This document shows positions 1,173-62,354 of a stretch of DNA of 64,000 nucleotides, piece by piece (the stretch's first letter is position 1; every line of letters starts with the position of its first letter). The DNA lies in assembly GCF_006345805.1 (NCBI RefSeq), contig NC_042997.1:126294001-126358000 (forward strand), written 5' to 3'. Source of the stretch: Octopus sinensis. Taxonomy: Eukaryota. Made by a program: the position numbers and the translations under genes. The notes beneath the pieces were generated by a model. The model worked only from the letters and a program-made list of their open reading frames with translations. It did no database searches and was not told the DNA's origin.

Positions 1173-1314
1173 CAGTTAATATGGTGCAATGATCCAGTGG
1201 TGTTATCACTGTGGTTATCACTACTGGTCATATGGTTGGTGATGTAGCTACTGGTGTTAGTGCGGGCGTGGCCAGTGGTGACATTAGGTGCAGGGCTGGT
1301 CATCCCATCAGTGT
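1173..1314 (-). mobile_element. Partial duplicate of the Penelope-like fragment at ~2040-2180
   Basis: AATATGGTGCAATGATCCAGTGGTGTTATC...GACATTAGGTGCAGG is near-identical at 1178 and 2045. Confidence 0.65.
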
Positions 1315-2230: not shown

Positions 2231-2675
2231 GATACTTTTAACATGGTACTGATATGAGTGCTTTTACATGGTGCCAGCAGGAGTACTTTTTACATGGCAC
2301 CAGTGCAGGACACTTACAGGCTAATCCTCTTCACCAGGGGGAACAGCTTTAACACTCCTTCTTTAACAAGTCTTTTTGAGTACAGCAAGGCACCAGGTAT
2401 CTCAGTTCTTTGTCATCTCATCTGAAAGGCTCAGCATCATGAGGTCATCCTTCAATACTTCGTCCTATGTCTTGGGTTTCCCTCTTCCATGAGTTTCATT
2501 CATTTTGAGAAATTGGTAGTTCTTTATGGAGCTGTTGGCATCCCTCCGTATTACACAACCAAACCAATACAGTCTTTTCTCTTGCACACCTCATCTAATT
2601 CTTCTTATGCCTAACTTCCTTCTCAATACATTAGCACTCTGTTGAACATGTACATTAACATTACAACATTACACC

Positions 2676-3088
2676 GGCGCAGGAATGACTGTGTGGTAAG
2701 TAGCTTGCTTACCAACCACATGGTTCTGGGTTCAGTCCTACTGCATGGCACCTTGGGCAGGTGTCTTCTACTATAGCCTCGGGCCGACCAAGGCCTTGTG
2801 AGTGGATTAGGCAGACGGAAACTGAAAGAAGCCAGTCGTATATGTATATATATGTATATGTATGAGTGTGTATATGTTTGTGTGTCTGTGTTTGTCCCCC
2901 AACATTGCTTGGCAACTGATGCTGGTGTGTTTACGTCCCCATAACTTAGCGGTTTGGCAAAAAGACACTGATGTAATAAGTACTAGGCTTACAAAGAATA
3001 AGTCCTGGAGTCGATTTGCTCAACTAAAGGCGGTGCTCCAGCATGGTCACAGTCAAATGACTGAAACAAGTAAAAGAGTAAAAGAATA
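2676..3088 (+). mobile_element. tRNA-derived SINE family A, full length, inserted in the RTE LINE
   Basis: A/B-box-like head (TGGTAAGTAGC...GGTTCAGTCC), internal (TA)/(TG) tract, tail GAAACAAGTAAAAGAGTAAAAG; >15 copies in the window. Confidence 0.9.
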
Positions 3089-3556
3089 TCCACTGGAGCA
3101 TACTAGCCTCATTCCTCTCTAGTCTTCGCATGTCTTCTGCATTCAGTACCCACATCTCACTGCCATGTAGAATTGTTGTCCTCATACATGCATCAATTTT
3201 CCTTGCCAACACAGGTAAAAGCTCTCTGAATTTTCTCCATCCTATTCTAATTCTAGCTATTACACTCTGTGTACATCCTCCCCTACTACTAATTTGGTTC
3301 CCTAGGTGGCAAAAATTATCCAACAGGACATTTAAGAAAATCAATTTCCCGAGTGACTGTAGATTTTATGGATCCTGTGCATCTTCCACATATGAACACT
3401 ATTTCTCTGTTAAACTTCCTATTATTCCACTGCAAATTTTGTGAGTGCATGGCTTAGATTGGGTACACCATATGGAATTCCTGCCAACATCTTTCCTACA
3501 AATCAGACAGGGCCACTTACCTGAAGTTGGTGGGGTCTGTCTGTTTTCTTGCTTGA

Positions 3557-3875
3557 CCTGAAAAACCATAACCAGCAAACGGGGAGATCCAATTTTCCAG
3601 CAGGTAGGCTTGAAGTGGACACATTTAGAAAAAAATTAATGTGCCAGGTTTAGTAAAGTCCTTAAGAATTTTGGCTCTCTCCATAATGCAGATTTTGCAA
3701 TGACCAGTCACATTAAATATATGGACCTGGATGATCTATTATTTTCTGATATCCCATGCAGCCCCTTAATCTTTGAGTTGCCACATAATGGCAGGTCAGG
3801 GACATGACAAACTATCTTTCTGGGACTCTGAAGGATGACTGGTGGTTGTGGATGTGACGTTTGAAAGATGTACTT
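3557..3875 (-). mobile_element. Penelope-like GIY-YIG C-terminal fragment nested in the RTE LINE
   Basis: STSFKRHIHNHQSSFRVPER, MWQLKD, CKICIMERAKIL, FFSKCVH on the minus strand; closely similar to 1684-1932. Confidence 0.75.
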
Positions 3876-4321
3876 GCTAAGTTAACAATAAGGTCCTTAA
3901 ATTCCAGGTTTTGCTTCCACATCTGTAATTTCTTTTCTAACTCTGATATATAATCTGTTATGAGAGCAAAATCATCAGCATATAGTAGTTCTCAGGGTCT
4001 GCCAGTTTTTAATTCCTCTGTTATGGCTTAGAGGACAATGATGAAAAGAAGGGTGCTGAGGACTGAGTCTTGATGAATGTTTGGCTGCACACCAAATTCT
4101 TCACTGTACTCGTGGTTAAATCTCACCTTACTGACAGTGTCTCTGTACATGGACTGTACCACTTTCATAAGCCACTTGCCCTCCATTTCACACAACAGGA
4201 TACTCTATCATAGGCTTTCTCTAGATCAATGATTGCCAGGTATAATGGTTTATTCTTAGCTAAGCACTTCTCTTGCAGTTGCCTTACTATGAAAATGGCA
4301 TTAGTACTGCTTCTCCCTGGG

Positions 4322-4708
4322 CAGCACTGATGGTGTGTGCTGGGTTGTAGTGACTAGGTTCTGCATCAGGTATAACCTCGGACTTAGCTCAACAGAAGTG
4401 TAGTGTATTGAGAAGTCGCCATTCGCTGGTAAAGTGGGGCTCACAATCTGGTATTGATTGTCTCCAGTTTTGTCACCGTAAACCCCAAACCCCTTCATGT
4501 AAGCAGTCTGGCAAGCATCTTTTCAGGCACTCTCTGTATTTAGTTCCTTTGCAGAATTACTGTTTGGTTTGATTTCAGAAATAGGGAAAATGTATTGGAC
4601 TAAAATATTAGCTCGTGAACGTTTCTCTTTCACCAGTTTTTCTAGATTGTTCTTTAATATCACATTTTGTTCTTTAATCTTGTTCTTAATGTTACTACAG
4701 AGCTTCAT
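4322..4708 (-). pseudogene. ATG14: Fragment of an ATG14 (Barkor)-like coding sequence; one stop and one frameshift
   Basis: Reads KNNLEKLVKEKRSRANILVQYIFPISEIKP...SA*KDACQTAYMKGFGVYGDKTGDNQYQIVSPTLPANGDFSIHYTSVE, then shifts frame to PDAEPSHYNPAHTISA; collinear with recalled ATG14 motifs IFPI.E.K, T.Y..G.W...D..GD, LP.NGD.S, NPA.TISA. Confidence 0.8.
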
Positions 4709-5154
4709 GCCAAACTGCATTTCATTTAGCCTAATTCTGTTCCTAATTAATTGGGTTATATCTCTCTGTAATTTTCATCCCCTGGTCCAAGAGTTTGATG
4801 CCTCTCTAACTGCTTCTATCTAAGTCATCTCAACTTACCCTTGTAGCAGCAAACAATAATGCTACTACACTAGTCACTGGGTATTATGCCACCATGAAGA
4901 ACCTGATTAGCTGTGTGGGTAACTAACCCATATCCTACCTTACAAGGTATTTTGAGTATCCCAGCAGAGACTCCAGATGGACCAGAGGCTCTCCCGGTTT
5001 TCATATCTTTAGTTGCCTTATTGACCATATTGCTGTCACCTAGGATGGCTGGTCCCTCTGTTGGGTTCATGTGAGGGAGATTCCCCTTATCCTATTCATT
5101 CTCCCTTGCATAATAACTTTTCCATGTCTCTTTCTTGTCTGAATCACTAAGTGC

Positions 5155-5560
5155 AGGTATATGTCCAAATCACTGGGCTTCTTTCAGTTTCTGTCTAACA
5201 AATCTATTCCAAAAGTTTTGATCAACCTGATGGTATAGTAGAAGATTATTGTCCAAGGTGCCAAGCAGTGGAACTGAACCAAGAACCGTCTGATTGAGAA
5301 ACAAACCTTTTATTTCTTTATTGCCCACAAGGGGCTAAATATAGAGGGGACAAACAAGGACGGACAAAGGGATTAAGTCGATTACATTGACCCCAGTGCA
5401 TAACAGGTACTTAATTTATCGACACCGAAAGGAGGAAAGGCAAAGTCGACCTCGGCAGAATTTGAACTCAGAACATAGCAGCAGACGAAATACCGCTAAG
5501 CATTTCGCCCAGCATGCTAATGTTTTTGCCAGCTCGCCACCTCTTACCACACAACCACAT
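5155..5560 (-). mobile_element. SINE family A head with a full SINE family B copy (5312-5541) nested in it
   Basis: Minus strand: GTGGTTGTGTGGTAAG, then family B (GGTGGCGAGCTGGC...AAAGAAATA), then the rest of the A head. Confidence 0.8.
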
Positions 5561-6065
5561 CTGCTATGTTGATTTGTATACTGGAAACTACAATACATCT
5601 TGCAGTTTAAATGGGGGTGTTTAATAGCAAAATCAGGCCCCAGTGGGACTGTTGCTTACTTCTCTCTATAGTTTCTCTCATCAAACATCAGTAATTTGTG
5701 TCATCCTAATGTTATCCTAGATTAATGCACAATATTTTTTGTAGAAGTATTATTGTCAAAAGAAAAAAAGTGTTAATTAGTCTGAGAAAGCACTTCTTCA
5801 GAACAGTTGAATATGGCATCAGTAAAACATAATGGTTTAAATCTCAGGTGTCACCTAGTTTCTGGAACATTCCAGCTGGAAATATAATAGAATAAAAACA
5901 TTTAAGAAATATGTTAAAAAAGATGTTTCTATGAGTGTGTGTGTGTGTGTGTATGTATGTGTGCCTGTGCAAGCATTTATGTCGGTATGTGGTTGTGTGT
6001 ATGAGCATGTGTGTATATGTCTGCATGTGTGCTTGTGTATGCATGTGTATGTGTGCATACATATG

Positions 6066-6096
<31 letters not shown>

Positions 6097-6697
6097 ATCT
6101 AGTAGTTATCAGTTATCTCTCAACAGAACATTACATCTGCTCACGCTGAGTCATCAAATACTTTATGGTATTGTAACATGTGCTCACCGACGCTATTTGA
6201 TTTACTTTAACAACTTAATTCCGAGACATATCCAATGATGATATATGAGGGAATATTTCTTCATCTTTATTTTTATAATATTTTCAAGTCATTTCTTTTC
6301 TTCATTATTCTCTCTGACTCTATCTTTTATATGCGTGTGGGGCTGAGGTGGGCCAGAAGTACAGGATCAGTGAAGTCACACAAATACCTGAAAGAGGTAT
6401 GTGAGCAGAAGGTTGACTCGCATGGGGCTCTTTTGCTTTGTGGCTGTCACTCAGAACAGATGTAGTGGCCACATGAGTTGAAGGAATTTACTGTTAGGTT
6501 CTGGTCTGAAGTTAGCCAAGTGAATCTCCTACGGATATTTCCCAGCTAGAAAAGATCAACGTTACAAGGGGACCTTCGAGGTTAGTGAATTACACTGTTT
6601 TCCCCCCATGCAACAGAGTGTTATCAAATAACTACTTGCGGAAGTATACAGAGTACAGGATATAATTCTATTTAAGCTGTTCCAATTAAAGCAGAGC

Positions 6698-6918
6698 TTT
6701 TACTCTTTTACTTGTTTCAGTCATTTGACTGTGGTCATGCTGGAGCACAGCCTTTAGTCGAACAAATCGACCCCAGGACTTATTCTTTGTAAGCCTAGTA
6801 CTTATTCTATCAGTCTCTTTTGTCGAACCGCTAAGGTATGGGGGACGTAAACACACCAGCATCGGTTGTCAAGAGATGTTGGGGGGACGAGCACAGACAC
6901 ACAAACATATATACACAC

Positions 6919-6949
<31 letters not shown>

Positions 6950-7115
6950 CATATATGCAACAGGCTTCTTTCAGTTTCCATCTACCAAATCCACTCACAA
7001 GGCTTTGGTTGGCCTGAGGCTATAGTAGAAGACACTTACCCAAGGTGCCACACAGTAGGACTGAACCCAGAACCATGTGGTTCATAAGCAAGCTACTTAC
7101 CATGCAGCCACTCCT
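6698..7115 (-). mobile_element. SINE family A, full length
   Basis: Reverse complement of the family A consensus with internal microsatellite. Confidence 0.9.
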
Positions 7116-7171
7116 ATGCTTTTCATGACTATAAGTAGGTTTGCCAAAGATTTTCTGTAATATAAGTGGAG

Positions 7172-8427: not shown

Positions 8428-9406
8428 CAAATATTTAGGAATAGAGTAATTAGAGTTCAGTGTGAACAACTGATTTAATAATAAAATTAATGTTTATTTA
8501 TACTTATCAAGAGTATGGTACTATTGTAAAATTAAAAATCAGTGATATTTGTCCAATTTCTATATCACTCTACACCATAAAAAAATCTGGAAATGTCACC
8601 TATGGTTCCACAGCTCTATCCTTTGTCTGTTTGAAAAGTATGTTGCTTTAACTGTTTAAAGAATATGCTGCTAAATTAATCGTATGGTTTTGTAAAACTT
8701 GCTTTAAGGCTTGCACTGACTGTATGTGAAATTATGGTTCTGATGCTGTAGTTATCTGAAGGAGGTTAGGGTCAGCAGTAAAGGTAGTAGTGAGAGGGTT
8801 ACCCAGAATAGACTTAGTAAGAAAGGAGTTTTACAGGCTTTGTCTGGAGAAATATTCTTTACTAAGGTTATGGATTGGAATAGGCTGAGTTTGTTAACAA
8901 AGAAAAGAAAACGGAAACAAAAGAGGGAAAAGAAAAGCAATAAAAAGTAAAGACACACACACACACACATACATATAGACACACACACACATACACCCAA
9001 ACAGTGAGAATGCCATTGTAAATGAAAGAATAGTGATATGACATTTGTCAGAATAGAAGTTGAATGAATGACAGGATGAAAGAATGACAGAATGAAAGAT
9101 AAAGAGAGGGATGAAGAAAGAGTATGAGGGAAAGAGACCAGGTAGCAAGAAGTCTGTATAAACTGCCATGAGGTTTGTATAAACTTATCAATAACTGATT
9201 TTTCAACGGATACAGTCATATTGTGTCTGTAATCAGGTTGTAGAAATGGAACAAAACTTTTTTGACAATTCATAAAACAAGAGAAGACATGCATACATCA
9301 TGAGTGAATATGCAAAATGAAGATCGTAATTTTGCTCCTAGACTGCAACTTAGTGGCCCTGGTTTGTTTGATTTATTATTATTTTACAGAGATAAGATGT
9401 TTACCC

Positions 9407-9639
9407 TTTTACTCTTTTACTGGTTTCAGTCATTTGACTGTGGCCATGCTGGAGCACCACCTTTTAGTTGAGCAAATCGACCCCAGGACTTATTCCTTGT
9501 AAGCCTAGTACTTATTCTATCAGTCTCTTTTGCCGAACCGCTAAGTTACGGGGGACATAAATACACCAGCATCGGTTGTCAAGTGATGTTGGGAGGACAA
9601 ACATAGACACACAAACATATACACACACACACACATACA

Positions 9640-9682
<43 letters not shown>

Positions 9683-9819
9683 GACGGACTTCTTTCAGTT
9701 TCCATCTACCAAATCCACTCACAAGGCTTTGGTCGGCCCGAGGCAATAGTAGAAGACACTGAACACGGAACCATTTGGTTGGTAAGCAAGCTACTTACCA
9801 CACAGCCACTCCCATGCCT
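9407..9819 (-). mobile_element. SINE family A, full length
   Basis: Family A consensus, reverse strand. Confidence 0.9.
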
Positions 9820-9982: not shown

Positions 9983-10413
9983 GAAACTCCAACGTCTGGC
10001 AGCTGACTTGGCAAACACCCATGAAATTATTAACCATCTTTCAAACAATAACTCTGAGCACCTTTTCAAACTCCACCTGTCTAACACCCATGGACATGTT
10101 TACAAAGTCAGAAAACAGCACAGCTTCCATGACTTTTGGAAACATTTTTTCATGCTAAGAGTTGCTGAAGTATGGAACAAACTGCCGGCATCAGTTGTTA
10201 GTTGTCGGAGCACTGCATCCTTCAAAACTTCCATGCTTCCTGAGATTCACCAACACTACACCTGATTTTTCTCCTCTCCATACACACGCAAGCATGTACC
10301 TGACTCATACACTGTTCATTTCCCAGACATTTGTACATTACTGCATATGCTTTATACGCACTTTTGACAAGTTGTGGTGCACCTGAGCACTGTTTCCAAT
10401 AATTTCATTATTA

Positions 10414-19010: not shown

Positions 19011-19409
19011 CTTACTCTACTCTTTTACTCTTTTACTTGTTTCGGTCATTTGACTGCGGCCATGCTGGAGCACCGCCTTTAGTCGAGAAAATCGACCCCA
19101 GAACTTATTCTTTGTAAGCCTAGTACTTATTCTATCGGTCTCTTTACCGAACCGTTAAGTTACGGGGACGCAAACACACCAGTATCGGTTGTCAAGTGAT
19201 GTTGGGGAGACAAACACAGACACACAAACACACACACACACACACACGCACATATATACAACAGGCTTCTTTCAGTTTCCGTCTACCAAATCTACTCACA
19301 CGGCTTTGGTCGGCCTGAGGCTATAGTAGAAGACACTTGCCCAAGGTGCCATGTGAACCCGGAACCATGTGGTTGGTAAGCAAGCTACTTACCACACAGC
19401 CACTCCTGT
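19011..19409 (-). mobile_element. SINE family A, full length
   Basis: Family A consensus, reverse strand. Confidence 0.9.
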
Positions 19410-19459
19410 GACTTGATGAATAGTTTGATTGAAACACTAATGTGTCTGGAACAGTTTTG

Positions 19460-22655: not shown

Positions 22656-23039
22656 CGAATGATGTTGTAGCATAATCATTATAGTGGTGGGATCATCCTG
22701 TCCTTCATTCACGACCATATTACCCAACGTGTTTTTCTCTTTTAAGACAGCAAGTTGTAAGTTGGTTATATTTCTAGCAGACTGAGACATCCTTTGATGG
22801 TTCATGGTACTCTTGTGGTTTAATTGCACTGTAATGGTGATATTTTAACGTTGATGCTGATGATATTTTTGTAGTTGTCAGCTGGTTAGAACAGTGGTTA
22901 CTAAGCAGCATTCCACTACAAACTGGTGTGGTGCATGATATAGGTTAGTACACTGGCGACAATAGTGGATGATTATCTTCTGCTAGTGATATAAACACGA
23001 GTGCTTATATGCACCATAAGTCCATATGAGAAGTTCTCC

Positions 23040-23966
23040 CATGGTAAATCCCATGGTAGATCTTTATTGCAATCAGACCTGGACACAATGCAGCAGTGGA
23101 TCATGGACTGGCAACTCATGCTGGCTGTGGAGAAATGTACCACTATGCATTTTGGGAGGAAAAACCCAGTGTCTACTTACTCCCTCCACAACACTAATCT
23201 CAAAAAGTCTTCTTGTGAATGTGACCTGGGCATTATTGTCGACAGCGATTTGTGTTGGACAAAACACATTGCTAAAATTGCCAAGAAGGCTGAGGGTGTC
23301 TTGGCATCACTTACCAAGTCCTTTGTGAGCCGCTCTCTGGCTATCTATCTGAAGCTTTATATAGCTATGGTGCTACCTCACCTGGAATTTGCATCACCGG
23401 TCTGGAACCCCTATCTTGCCTAGGATATTAATCATTTGGAAACCATTCAGTGATGTGCAACCAAGAGAATACCCTCCATCAGGCATTTGCCATATTCTGA
23501 ATGCCTTACTTCCCTGGGCATGGATACATTGAAACTCTGACGTCTGGCAGCTGACTTGGCAGACACCCATAAAATTATTTACCATCTTACTAACAATAAC
23601 TCTGAGCACCTTTTCAAACTCCACCTGTCTAACACCCGTGGACATGTTTACAAAGTCAGAAAACAGCACAGCTCCCATGACTTTTGGGAACATTTTTTCA
23701 TGCTAAGAGTTGCTGAAGTATGGAACAAACTGCCGGCATCAGTTGTTAGTTGTCGGAGCACTGCATCCTTCAAAACTTCCATGCTTCCTGAGATTCGCCA
23801 ACACTACACCTGATTTTCTCCCCTCCATACACATGCAAACATATATCTGTCTCATACACTGTTCACTTTCCAGACATTTGTACTTTACTGCATATGCTTT
23901 ATATGCACTTTTGACAAGTTGTGGTGCACCTAACCACTGTACACAATAATTTCATTATTATTATCA
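23040..23966 (+). mobile_element. 5'-truncated CR1-like LINE (post-RT C-terminus and 3' UTR)
   Basis: LQSDLDTMQQW..DWQL....EKC..MHFGRKN, DLGIIVDSDL, PHLEFASPVWNPY, ATKRIP, NTRGH, FF.LRV..VWNKLP; premature stops; (TTA)n tail. Confidence 0.9.
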
Positions 23967-40619: not shown

Positions 40620-41210
40620 CTTAGCGGTTTTTTGTCTACCGTTATGTTCTGAGTTCAAATTCTGCCAAGGTCGAATTTGCCTTTCAACCTTTCGGGGTCG
40701 ATAAATCAAGTACCAGTTGCTCACTGGGGGTCGATGTAATCGACTTAATCCCTTTGTCTGTCCTTGTTTGTCTCCTCTATGTTTAGCCCCTTGTGGGTAA
40801 TAAAGAAATAAGAAGCTTGCTTACCAGCCGCAAGGTTCCGGGTTCAGTCCCACTGCGTGGCACCTTGGGCAACTGTTTTCTACTATAACCTCGGGCTGAC
40901 TAAAGCCCTGTGAGTGGATCTGGTAGACGGAAATTGAAAGAAGCCTGTCATGTATATGTATATATATATATATTTATATATACATGTATGTGTGTGTATA
41001 TGTTTGTGTGTCTGTGTTTGTCCCCCCAACATCGCTTGATAACCGATGCTGGTGTGTTTACATCCCTGTAACTTAGCAGTTCGGTAAAAGAGACCGATAG
41101 AATAAGTACTAAGCTTACAAAGAATAAGTCCTGGGGGTCGATTTGCTTGACTAAAATGCGGTGCTCCAGCATGGGCACAGTCAAATGACTGAAACAAGTA
41201 AAAGAGTAAC
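40615..41210 (+). mobile_element. 5'-truncated SINE B fused directly to a SINE A lacking its first ~25 nt
   Basis: B tail AATAAAGAAATA joins AGAAGCTTGCTTACC at ~40812. Confidence 0.85.
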
Positions 41211-59187: not shown

Positions 59188-60401
59188 TTCGATGTACCGA
59201 TGGGGGCATACGACGGGGCTGAGTTATGTATGCTCATAGGAGCCTTTATTCTCCATAATCTAAAAATAGAATTCCCTTTTATAGATGCAGGTTTATATAG
59301 GGATGACGGCCTTATAGCCACGCATAATCTAAACGGCCATGAATCAGATAGACTTAGGAAGGACCTCATAGCTTTCTTTCAAAGGATGGGCTTATGGGTT
59401 ACGATAGATGCTAACCTGAATAGTGTAGATTTTTTAGACGTAAATTTTAATGTAAGATCGGATAGATTTAAACCTTTCCGTAAGCCCAATGAAAAGCTAT
59501 CGTATATTAGCAAAGATTCGAACCATCCACCAGTTATCCGTAGGAACTTAGTCAGCAATGTAGGTAGAAGAAATCTTCAATTTCTTCGGACGAGGCAGCA
59601 TTCCATAATGCTGCACCTTATTACGATAGTGCATTAAAGAATAGTGGATTCTCTGAGGAGATCCAGTTCAACCAGCTTAATGCTGATAATAATGCTGCAC
59701 GAAGAACTAGGACCAGGAAAGTTTTGTGGTTCAACCCGGCTTTCAATTTGGCCGTAAAGACTAATATAGGTAAGGAATTTTTGAGATTAGTCTCTAAGCA
59801 TTTTAAGCAGGGTCATAAATTCTATAGGATATTTAATAGAAGAACCCTGAAGGTTAGCTATTCTTGTTGCAGAAATTTCGCCTCTTACATTAGCCAACAT
59901 AATAGGAAGCTAATTGAGATTAGACATGGTGCCGAGCCCATTAAGAAATGCAATTTCAAAAACGAAAGCTCCTGTCCGTTAGAAGGGAAATGTCTAGTGA
60001 AAGGAGTAGTTTATAGAGCCAAGGTGCAAGTGGAAGACTCATCAGAATACAAGACATACACAGGGGCTTCAGAAAATTCATTTAAAACAAGATTTTATTC
60101 TCATAAAAATTCATTTAAATACCCAGAGAATAGGAAGAGGACCAGCCTAGCAAAATATGTCTGGGAACTAAAAGAAAAGGAAGCCCCACCTTTCAACGTG
60201 ACATGGAGCATTCTGGACAGGGCGGCACCATACAGGCATGGAGCATACAAAAATAATTTCAAGTGCAAACTTTGTCTATTAGAAAAAATGTACATCTTAT
60301 TCAAAGACAATAATTCTTTGAATCAAAGAAGTGAGCTAATGAACTTATGTAGGCACGCAGCTAAATTTAAAATGTCGAATATAAATATACCATATGGATA
60401 G
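59188..60401 (+). pseudogene. Penelope RT (C-terminal half) plus GIY-YIG endonuclease; one frameshift near 59570
   Basis: FDVPMGAYDGAELC, LYRDDGL, VDFLDV, SNHPP, WFNP.F...VKTNIGK.FL, VVYRA...YTGAS..FKTRF..H..SF, CKLCLLEK, LNQRSEL..LCRH. Confidence 0.95.
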
Positions 60402-61939: not shown

Positions 61940-62354
61940 TCTTTTACTCTTTTATTTATCTCAGTCATTTGACTGTGGCCATGTTGGAGCACCGCATTTA
62001 GTTGAGCTAATTGACCCCAGGACTTATTCTTTGTAAGCCTAGTACTTATTCTGTCGTTCTCTTTTGCTGAACCGCTAAGTTATGGGGACGTAAACACACC
62101 AGCATCGGTTGTCAAGCAATGTTGGGGGGGGGGGACAAACACAGACACACAAACATATACACACATGCACACATACATATATACATATATACGACAGGCT
62201 TCTTTCAGTTTCTGTCTACCAAATCCACTCACAAGGCTTTGGTCGGCCCAAGGCTATAGTAGAAGCCACTTGCCCAAGGTGTCACACAGTGGGACTGAAC
62301 CCAGAACCATGTGGTTGGTAAGCAAGCTACTTACCACACAGCCACTCCTACACC

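What the first reader, a model, noticed from the sequence alone, without database searches (positions are those of the whole stretch)
4322..4708. ATG14-like mRNA fragment captured inside a LINE reverse-transcriptase ORF
Seen: the RTE frame reads ...IRLNEMQFG, then 387 nt of non-TE coding sequence, then resumes at PGRS..AIFIVRQLQEK with almost nothing lost. The upstream junction is in frame. Recognition from memory: the insert matches the coiled-coil end and BARA-proximal region of the autophagy PI3K subunit ATG14 (IFPI.E.K; T.Y..G; D..GD; LP.NGD.S; NPA.TISA). It shows no intron, consistent with a spliced mRNA template. A host-gene piece this short and disguised is easily missed by annotation.
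Basis: partly seen in the sequence, partly recalled or inferred. Interest (0 to 1): 0.8.

Follow-up and report, generated by a model that had tools for sequence, protein, structure and literature searches.

The report
Spliced ATG14 fragment inside dead LINE
A 388-base, intron-free and already broken piece of the autophagy gene ATG14 sits inside the reverse-transcriptase gene of a decayed jumping element in an octopus-type genome; it is a real but non-functional relic of host mRNA copied back into DNA, a known kind of event.

Summary
On the minus strand, a decayed non-LTR (LINE) reverse-transcriptase frame reads ...IRLNEMQFG up to 4709. It resumes at 4320 with PGRSSTNAIFIVRQLQEK. Relatives read MQFGF[M/V]xGR without a break, so only two codons are missing.

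The 388 nt in between (4708-4321) match ATG14/Barkor residues 175-306 (E=4e-13 against solved structures). In a relative's genomic ATG14 locus (L002) they align colinearly to three separate exons. The alignment runs from mid-exon to mid-exon and crosses two junctions seamlessly, where L002 has introns of 4.9 kb and 0.3 kb. The ultimate template was therefore spliced mRNA.

- There is no poly(A) tail and no target-site duplication.
- The piece carries one stop codon and one frameshift.
- The downstream junction is out of frame.
- No other ATG14 sequence lies in the 64 kb window, and none of 21 related LINE proteins has the insert.

Best reading (about 0.5): a cDNA patch captured during repair of a DNA break in an already integrated LINE copy. 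Main rival (about 0.35): a double template switch by the LINE reverse transcriptase.

It is a new member of a known kind and of modest interest. The "RTE" label and the species' own ATG14 gene could not be checked.

The parts
4709..5165 (-). 5'-truncated LINE reverse-transcriptase coding remnant upstream of the insert. It ends with ...IRLNEMQFG (G codon 4711-4709) and carries several stops and two frameshifts.
   Evidence: Translation. Pfam RVT_1 E=1e-14. 69% nt identity to an Octopus sinensis LINE copy over window 5161-4710. Protein alignment with relatives.
4321..4708 (-). ATG14 (Barkor) cDNA-derived insert of 388 nt. It has the same orientation as the LINE and corresponds to human ATG14 residues about 175-306. 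There is no poly(A) and no target-site duplication.
   Evidence: PDB phmmer E=4e-13. tblastn with spliced L002 exons E=6.7e-44, the only ATG14 match in the window. 72.9% nt identity to L002 exons. Junction sequences read directly.
4560..4708 (-). Part of the insert equivalent to the 3' 60% of ATG14 'exon X' (end of the coiled coil, ...IFPISEIKPN). It starts mid-exon.
   Evidence: Aligns to L002 4547-4695. L002 exon X is 4461-4695 with ag|...|gt borders.
4393..4559 (-). Part equivalent to the whole of ATG14 'exon A' (SNSA...LPANGDFSIHYTS). It is joined seamlessly to exon X at 4560/4559 and contains the TGA stop at 4525-4523.
   Evidence: Aligns to L002 9561-9721 and L001 351-511. The 4.9-kb intron of L002 is absent.
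4321..4392 (-). Part equivalent to the first half of ATG14 'exon B' (VE.KSEVIPDAEPSHYNPAHTISAA). It is joined seamlessly to exon A at 4393/4392, has a 1-nt deletion after 4389, and ends mid-exon.
   Evidence: Aligns to L002 10032-10105. The 310-nt intron of L002 (402 nt in L001) is absent.
3878..4320 (-). The LINE RT continues (PGRSSTNAIFIVRQLQEK ... YADDFALI ... LIVNLA), with stops and one frameshift.
   Evidence: Translation. Pfam RVT_1. Alignment with relatives.
3555..3877 (-). Unrelated repeat of about 320 nt inserted in the LINE between ...VNLA and the Cys-rich region. A second copy lies at 1932-1665.
   Evidence: Self-BLAST and pairwise alignment. Relatives are uninterrupted here.
3085..3554 (-). 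LINE Cys-rich (PHD-like in relatives) segment and C-terminal RT-associated region (SGKWPCLICRKDVGRNS ... RRLERNEASMLQW).
   Evidence: Translation. Relatives carry PF00628 PHD at the matching place. The window segment itself got no Pfam hit.
2681..3084 (.). SINE-like interspersed repeat of about 420 nt inserted into the LINE. It has many copies in the window.
   Evidence: Self-BLAST: 6697-7115 matches 3084-2681 at 87%, plus more than 10 other copies.
2370..2680 (-). Probable last part of the LINE ORF (QEKRLYWFGCVIRRD...GRGKPKT...).
   Evidence: Reading of the translation only. Inferred, not tested by search.

Best explanation
A short internal stretch of mature, spliced ATG14 mRNA was copied into DNA by a cellular retroelement reverse transcriptase. 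The stretch runs from the middle of one exon, through the whole next exon, to the middle of a third. The resulting cDNA piece was used as a 'patch' when a chromosomal double-strand break inside an already integrated LINE copy was rejoined by end joining. About 6 bp of the LINE (two codons, F-V/M) were lost at the break, and 388 bp were gained.

The result is a dead sequence. The ATG14 piece lacks the N-terminal Cys repeats, most of the coiled coil and the whole C-terminal half. It has since picked up a stop codon and a frameshift. It also breaks the LINE's RT frame at its downstream end.

Shown: the ATG14 identity, the lack of introns at two exon junctions, the lack of poly(A) and of a target-site duplication, the minimal loss of LINE sequence, and the pseudogene state.

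Inferred: that the LINE copy was already in the chromosome when the patch arrived, and that end joining was the route.
For: - Identity.
- Three exons joined exactly, with both ends mid-exon. One of the two intron positions (right after IFPIxExxxx) also appears to be used in vertebrates, judging from where exon read-through ORFs P0003-P0005 begin. It is therefore probably ancient.
- No A-run at the mRNA-sense 3' end of the insert, and no duplicated flank...CAGTTTGGC|ATGAAGCTC... and ...AGTGCTGC|CCAGGGAGA....
- Only two codons of LINE are missing, judged against 9 aligned relatives and an O. sinensis copy that reads cagtttggttttgtacaaaaaagg through the site.
- None of the 21 related LINE proteins retrieved (9 of them aligned) carries the insert, and no RT-ATG14 chimera appears among the 95 library hits. 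The insert is therefore not a feature of the LINE family.
- This anatomy matches published class 2 templated sequence insertions and RT-product-mediated break repair. Examples are the 310-bp Inadl and 797-bp Pcnt internal spliced mRNA pieces, which have no poly(A), short microhomology and microdeletions (PMC5110952; PMC4516963).
Against: - The insert has the same orientation as the LINE. A template switch requires this; break repair gives it only half the time.
- A patch lands inside LINE sequence by chance only in proportion to the LINE share of the genome.
- Disabling lesions are about as dense in the insert (2 in 388 nt) as in the LINE flanks (about 11 in about 1,450 nt). Nothing shows the LINE copy is older than the insert.
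- Microhomology or filler bases at the junctions could not be assessed without the species' own ATG14 and the LINE subfamily consensus.
- No empty-site allele or ortholog was available.
Confidence: 0.5

Rival explanations
1. Double template switch during the LINE's own target-primed reverse transcription. The RT copied the LINE RNA from its 3' end up to the PGRS codons. It then jumped to an ATG14 mRNA (or an mRNA fragment) and copied 388 nt. It then jumped back to the LINE RNA almost exactly where it had left, and continued towards the 5' end. On this reading the chimera was born as one dead-on-arrival insertion.
For: - The sense-sense orientation of the insert and the LINE is what template switching requires (orientation rule stated in bioRxiv 10.1101/2025.02.02.635956).
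- The event lies inside a LINE.
- Both ends of the ATG14 piece are mid-exon, as expected for RNA-level jumps.
- Double template jumps by LINE RTs are documented (PMC2104539).
- The insert and the LINE flanks look equally decayed.
Against: - Documented LINE chimeras put the foreign RNA at the 5' end of the LINE part. The examples read here do not return to the LINE.
- A return within 6 nt of the departure point needs a special explanation, such as a nicked LINE RNA whose two halves stayed in the particle.
- No paralogous chimeric copy was seen in any accessible data.
Confidence: 0.35
2. DNA-level capture. The piece was copied or moved from an intronless DNA source, either an existing ATG14 processed pseudogene elsewhere in the genome or an ATG14 gene that has lost these introns in octopods. 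No RNA or cDNA was the direct donor.
For: Intron absence only proves the ultimate origin. The exon structure was read from a distant relative, L002, which shares no interspersed repeats with the window, not from the same species.
Against: - Two intron losses would be needed in the parent gene.
- One of the two intron positions seems conserved as far as vertebrates.
- No other ATG14-like sequence lies in the 64 kb window.
Confidence: 0.07
3. The ATG14 module is part of a propagating LINE subfamily, or of a locus kept for a function, for example as a source of small RNAs matching ATG14.
For: Same-strand, in-frame upstream junction. The neighbourhood is dense in transposable elements.
Against: - The downstream junction breaks the RT frame, so the chimera could not encode its own RT.
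- The fragment carries a stop codon and a frameshift.
- The 21 related LINE proteins and two octopus copies lack it.
- No second copy lies in the window.
Confidence: 0.04
4. Assembly or library artefact: a chimeric read joining cDNA or other DNA into a LINE.
For: No read-level data could be examined.
Against: - The fragment is a decayed pseudogene (TTA->TGA stop, 1-nt deletion, a 6-nt insertion relative to relatives), not a clean cDNA.
- It replaces just 6 nt within one continuous LINE copy.
Confidence: 0.03

Closest known systems
Class 2 templated sequence insertions (TSI/TSIP) and RT-product-mediated double-strand-break repair (RMDR) (PMC5110952; PMC4516963)
   Same: A short internal piece of spliced mRNA (hundreds of bp). 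No poly(A) and no target-site duplication. A microdeletion of a few bp at the target. The inserted piece has no function.
   Different: Those cases were seen as human polymorphisms or at engineered breaks in human cells and mouse zygotes. This one is an old, fixed-looking, decayed example in a cephalopod. Its target is the RT gene of a LINE, in the same orientation. Junction microhomology could not be scored.
LINE template-switch chimeric retrogenes, bipartite and tripartite, such as U6/L1, mRNA/L1 and WEIRD/Mg-SINE/MGL (PMC2104539; bioRxiv 10.1101/2025.02.02.635956)
   Same: Host RNA copy and LINE copy fused head-to-tail in the same orientation. Junctions are not at splice sites. Double jumps are documented.
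   Different: In the known chimeras described in the papers read, the foreign RNA forms the 5' end and the RT does not return to the LINE. Here LINE sequence continues on both sides with only 6 nt missing. Target-site duplications for the whole unit were not assessed.
Classical processed pseudogene (LINE-mediated retrocopy; class 1 TSIP)
   Same: Intron-free copy of a host mRNA, decaying neutrally.
   Different: No 3' end of the mRNA, no poly(A) tail and no target-site duplication. Only 388 nt from the middle of the coding region are present.
ATG14 / Barkor (PF10186), subunit of the autophagy PI3K complex I
   Same: Clear sequence homology to residues about 175-306 (end of the coiled coil and the following region).
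   Different: It is only about a quarter of the protein, it is interrupted by a stop and a frameshift, and it has no start, promoter or C-terminal membrane-targeting region. It is not a gene.

Membership tests
ATG14 (PF10186; Beclin 1-associated autophagy-related key regulator) | Significant sequence similarity to ATG14 rather than to other proteins | tested here: met
   The only solved-structure hits at E<=1 are ATG14 chains (E=4e-13). The best full-length library hits, P0039 and P0041, are PF10186. Spliced L002 exons hit the window at E=6.7e-44. Pfam itself did not score the short decayed fragment.
ATG14 (PF10186; Beclin 1-associated autophagy-related key regulator) | Complete, open coding sequence (N-terminal Cys repeats, full coiled coil, C-terminal region) | tested here: not met
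   Only the equivalent of residues about 175-306 is present. There is a TGA at 4525-4523 and a 1-nt deletion after 4389. No other ATG14 piece lies in the window.
Retro-derived (mRNA-templated) sequence | Colinear with joined exons, with no intron sequence at exon-exon junctions | tested here: met
   Two junctions (4560/4559 and 4393/4392) are seamless where L002 has introns of 4.9 kb and 310 nt and L001 has one of 402 nt. This was tested against a relative, not the same species.
Classical processed pseudogene / class 1 TSIP (TPRT-mediated) | Poly(A) tail at the 3' end of the copy | tested here: not met
   The insert ends ...ATCAGTGCTGC and is directly followed by LINE CCAGGGAGA.
Classical processed pseudogene / class 1 TSIP (TPRT-mediated) | Target-site duplication of at least 5 bp flanking the insert | tested here: not met
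   The flanks ...GCAGTTTGGC and CCAGGGAGAAG... share no repeat. Instead, 6 nt of target are missing.
Class 2 templated sequence insertion / RMDR | Internal RNA-derived fragment with no TSD and no poly(A), and a small deletion at the target | tested here: met
   Features as defined in PMC5110952 and PMC4516963.
Class 2 templated sequence insertion / RMDR | Microhomology or non-templated bases at the junctions | tested here: inconclusive
   Only proxies were available (L002 for ATG14, L003 for the LINE). At most 1-3 nt of possible overlap (ATG / CC) can be seen.
Class 2 templated sequence insertion / RMDR | The target existed before the insert (empty site in an allele or ortholog) | not testable with these tools
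   No same-species or sister-species genome could be searched by DNA. Exact-ORF look-ups found nothing.
LINE template-switch chimera | Parts in the same transcriptional orientation, with junctions not at splice sites | tested here: met
   Both parts are on the minus strand, and both insert ends are mid-exon.
LINE template-switch chimera | Foreign RNA forms the 5' part, and the whole unit is flanked by one TSD | tested here: not met
   LINE sequence continues 5' of the insert for about 450 nt (4709-5165). The TSD of the whole LINE was not examined.
Non-LTR (LINE) reverse transcriptase | RT domain with conserved motifs, and relatives that are LINE ORFs | tested here: met
   RVT_1 E=1e-14. 21 relatives at 45-62% identity, including proteins of O. 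bimaculoides and O. sinensis.
   No reference clade sequences were available. Relatives carry a PHD-type finger after the RT, which I cannot assign to a clade from these data.

The most novel reading that the evidence does not exclude
The chimera was made by the LINE's own reverse transcriptase. It jumped from LINE RNA to ATG14 mRNA and back to the very point it had left, for instance across a cleaved LINE RNA. Copies of this LINE-ATG14-LINE mosaic exist elsewhere in the genome. This would show a route by which cephalopod LINEs take host coding modules into their ORF, and a possible source of small RNAs matching an autophagy gene.
Probability: 0.05. Interest if true: 0.65.

Novelty: new member of a known kind. 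Interest (0 to 1): 0.3.

Why it matters
The practical point is annotation. A 388-nt ATG14-like stretch hidden in a LINE can seed false exon or gene models. An Octopus sinensis RefSeq model (LOC118765482) is already built on a decayed copy of this LINE family.

Biologically, it is a clean natural example in a cephalopod of host mRNA being reverse-transcribed and written back into the germline other than as a classical retrocopy. That is of some interest because octopus LINEs are reported as active (PMC9115989; title and abstract only).

If the template-switch route were shown, it would illustrate how a LINE ORF can pick up foreign coding sequence. As it stands, the piece is a non-functional relic.

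Tried and rejected
Searches that gave nothing useful:
- A Pfam scan of the insert found no family. Identity had to come from the PDB sequence search and the library searches.
- The first homology search returned a single 74-aa exon ORF. A second search with an alignment was needed.
- No full-length cephalopod ATG14 protein surfaced, so the same-species test could not be run.
- Exact-sequence look-ups of the junction ORF and of a 225-aa window ORF found nothing on record.
- A paper search for ERR3431203 and ERZ21867824 and the cluster-member names did not identify the organism behind L001 and L002.
- tRNA and Rfam scans of the window found nothing.
- Pfam found nothing on four other window ORFs or on the LINE Cys-rich segment.

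Readings rejected:
- Classical processed pseudogene: no poly(A), no TSD, and an internal fragment only.
- Splicing-made chimera (cis or trans splicing of ATG14 exons to the LINE): both ends of the fragment are mid-exon, not at exon borders.
- Two unrelated LINE pieces flanking the fragment by chance: the flanks abut on adjacent alignment columns of the same family.
- Real ATG14 exon(s) of a resident gene: three exons are fused, there is a stop and a frameshift, and no other exon lies within 64 kb.
- The bacterial repeat proteins among the library hits (for example P0040, 21 stretches) are spurious low-complexity-type matches.

An attempt to rank the age of the insert against the LINE by density of disabling mutations was uninformative.

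Full report
**What is there**

I read window 3000-6500 on the minus strand and translated it in three frames. A decayed reverse-transcriptase frame runs from about 5165 downwards. It reads ...GIKLLDQGMKITER / ITQLIRNRIRLNEMQFG and ends with the G codon at 4711-4709.

The same frame then continues without a shift into MKLCSNIKNKIKEQNVILKNNLEKLVKEKRSRANILVQYIFPISEIKPNSNSAKELNTESA, followed by a TGA stop at 4525-4523. After the stop it reads KDACQTAYMKGFGVYGDKTGDNQYQIVSPTLPANGDFSIHYTSVEL. After a 1-nt deletion it reads KSEVIPDAEPSHYNPAHTISAA.

At 4320 the RT resumes in a different frame with PGRSSTNAIFIVRQLQEKCLAKNKPLYLAIIDLEKAYDRV... and goes on through YADDFALI.

The two RT flanks joined together hit Pfam RVT_1 at E=1e-14.

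**The LINE is one continuous copy**

A homology search with the joined flanks returned 21 LINE proteins at E<=1e-10, at 45-62% identity in the nine I aligned. Two are named by their sources: Octopus bimaculoides XP_014789569.1 and Octopus sinensis LOC118765482.

In the alignment every relative reads MQFGF[M/V]xGR(G/S)..AIFIVRQLQEK without a break. The window copy lacks exactly the two residues after QFG.

I fetched the O. sinensis locus (L003, CM016869.1). It holds a LINE copy that is 69% identical to window 5161-4710. At the DNA level it reads cagtttggttttgtacaaaaaagg straight through the site.

The foreign piece is therefore 4708..4321, which is 388 nt, and it replaces about 6 nt.

**The insert is ATG14**

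A sequence search of all solved structures with the conceptual translation (X at the stop, frameshift bridged) found only ATG14/Barkor chains. The match covers residues 175-306 at E=3.7e-13 and 5.1e-13.

The exhaustive search of 1.84 billion representative proteins gave 95 hits. The best full-length ones are about 470 aa and match at positions about 160-290. P0039 and P0041 are PF10186 ATG14 at E=2e-27 and 5e-33.

A few long repetitive proteins in that list, such as P0040, are spurious bacterial repeat proteins. Pfam itself did not score the short decayed fragment.

tblastn of ATG14 proteins against the whole window finds only 4708-4320. The window therefore holds no resident ATG14 gene.

**It comes from spliced mRNA**

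The homology searches surfaced two genomic contigs from unidentified relatives that carry ATG14 exons. L001 is a Logan contig of run ERR3431203. L002 is 20 kb of an ENA contig of 163 kb.

In L002 the insert maps to three separate exons, each with canonical ag|...|gt borders:
- exon X, 4461-4695
- exon A, 9561-9721
- exon B, 10032-10182

The introns between them are 4.9 kb and 310 nt. The second intron is 402 nt in L001.

The window sequence aligns colinearly to the joined exons, from the middle of exon X to the middle of exon B. It passes both junctions without any extra base:
- ...AAACCAAACAG|TAATTCTGC... at 4560/4559
- ...CACTTCTG|TTGAGC... at 4393/4392

Nucleotide identity is 69%, 75% and 75% for the three parts, and 72.9% overall. 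The spliced L002 protein hits the window at E=6.7e-44.

The first intron position, ten residues after IFPI, appears to be shared with vertebrates. I infer this from where the exon read-through ORFs P0003-P0005 begin. The inference is weak, but it suggests the intron is old.

Two caveats apply:
- L002 shares no interspersed repeats with the window, whereas the 12.7-kb O. sinensis locus shares 58 repeat matches. The window is from an octopod, and the comparison gene is from a distant relative.
- Intron absence shows the ultimate source, not the immediate donor.

**What it is not**

It is not a classical retrocopy. The mRNA-sense 3' end of the piece (...ATCAGTGCTGC) abuts LINE sequence directly with no A-run. 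The flanks share no duplication, and only the middle of the coding region is present.

It was not made by splicing, because both ends are mid-exon.

It is not a feature of the LINE family. It is not repeated in the window.

It is not functional:
- There is a stop codon and a frameshift.
- Only about a quarter of the protein is present.
- The downstream junction is out of frame with the RT (frame 1 before the insert, frame 2 after it).
- The in-frame upstream junction is a one-in-three coincidence.

**How it most likely arose**

Two known routes fit the anatomy.

(a) Break repair with a cDNA patch. Published class 2 templated insertions and RT-product-mediated repair events have the same features. 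They are internal pieces of spliced mRNA of a few hundred bp, with no poly(A), no TSD, microdeletion and short microhomology (PMC5110952; PMC4516963, with Inadl at 310 bp and Pcnt at 797 bp). This route explains most simply why almost nothing of the LINE is lost.

(b) A double template switch by the LINE RT during its own insertion. Double jumps are documented (PMC2104539), and template switching demands the same-strand arrangement seen here. It would also explain why the event lies in a LINE. However, the described chimeras put the foreign RNA at the 5' end. A return to within 6 nt of the departure point needs an extra assumption.

The density of disabling lesions is similar in the insert and in the LINE flanks, so relative age does not decide between them. 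Junction microhomology cannot be scored without the parent sequences.

I put (a) at about 0.5 and (b) at about 0.35. The remainder is split between capture from an intronless DNA source, a propagated or functional chimera, and an artefact. The decisive test is an orthologous or allelic copy of this LINE without the insert, and I could not run it.

**Surroundings**

The same LINE copy is 5'-truncated at about 5165. It is further interrupted by a repeat of about 320 nt (3877-3555; second copy at 1932-1665) and by a SINE-like element of about 420 nt (3084-2681, many copies). It probably ends near 2370 (from reading only). No tRNA or Rfam family was found in the window.

**Verdict**

The 'RTE' label and the mechanism remain open. 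This is a new example of a known kind of event, a templated, RNA-derived patch or a LINE chimera, and it is a dead relic. Its interest is modest.

Noticed in passing
window 3555-3877 and 1665-1932: A repeat of about 320 nt interrupts the LINE between ...VNLA and the Cys-rich region. It has a second same-strand copy 1.9 kb away, roughly 93-95% identical apart from a run of deletions totalling about 70 nt and a 15-nt insertion. The shared stretch seems to run a few tens of nt into what looks like LINE sequence, so this may be a local duplication rather than two independent insertions.
   Followed up: partly
window ~2085-2175 and ~1200-1300 (minus strand): The peptide-like string TSPAPNVTTGH(T/A)RTNTSSY(F/I)TNHMTSSDN occurs twice about 900 nt apart, downstream of the LINE. 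Together with the 3877/1932 pair, this hints at a larger repeated structure at the LINE's 3' side.
   Followed up: no
window 2681-3084, 6697-7116, 9406-9817, 19022-19410, 40809-41209, 61941-62350 and others: An abundant SINE-like repeat of about 420 nt with an internal microsatellite. There are more than 12 copies in 64 kb at 70-89% identity, and one copy is inserted in the LINE. Part of it also matches the O. sinensis locus L003 (6863-7204).
   Followed up: partly
L003 6001-6738 (Octopus sinensis CM016869.1, about 73.10 Mb): The RefSeq model LOC118765482 ('uncharacterized protein', P0035) is built on a decayed, truncated copy of this LINE family plus non-coding flank. It is probably an annotation artefact rather than a host gene.
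   Followed up: partly
L002 9722-10031 compared with vertebrate ORFs P0003-P0007: The intron before the NPAHTISAAL exon sits about 11 codons further upstream in L002/L001 than in the vertebrate ATG14 contigs. The preceding intron (after IFPIxExxxx) appears to be at the same place. This could be intron sliding or independent gain, judged only from ORF read-through.
   Followed up: no
one search hit list (P0040, P0059, P0068, P0110, P0115, P0117): Long repetitive proteins match query residues about 81-126 in 5-21 stretches. P0040 is a 1,425-aa tandem-repeat protein of bacterial surface-protein type. These are spurious for ATG14 and would mislead an automated best-hit call.
   Followed up: partly
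window 23001-23423, 59200-59637, 59724-60401 (plus strand): These are further long ORFs that read like transposable-element remnants (an RT C-terminal-like piece, then two adjacent ORFs with a Cys/His-rich tail). None got a Pfam hit at E<=0.01.
   Followed up: partly
window 5400-5560 and 5176-5304 (minus strand), 5930-6110: Immediately 5' of the truncated LINE lie two more short interspersed repeats and a long (CA)n-rich microsatellite. The LINE's true 5' junction is therefore buried in other repeats.
   Followed up: no
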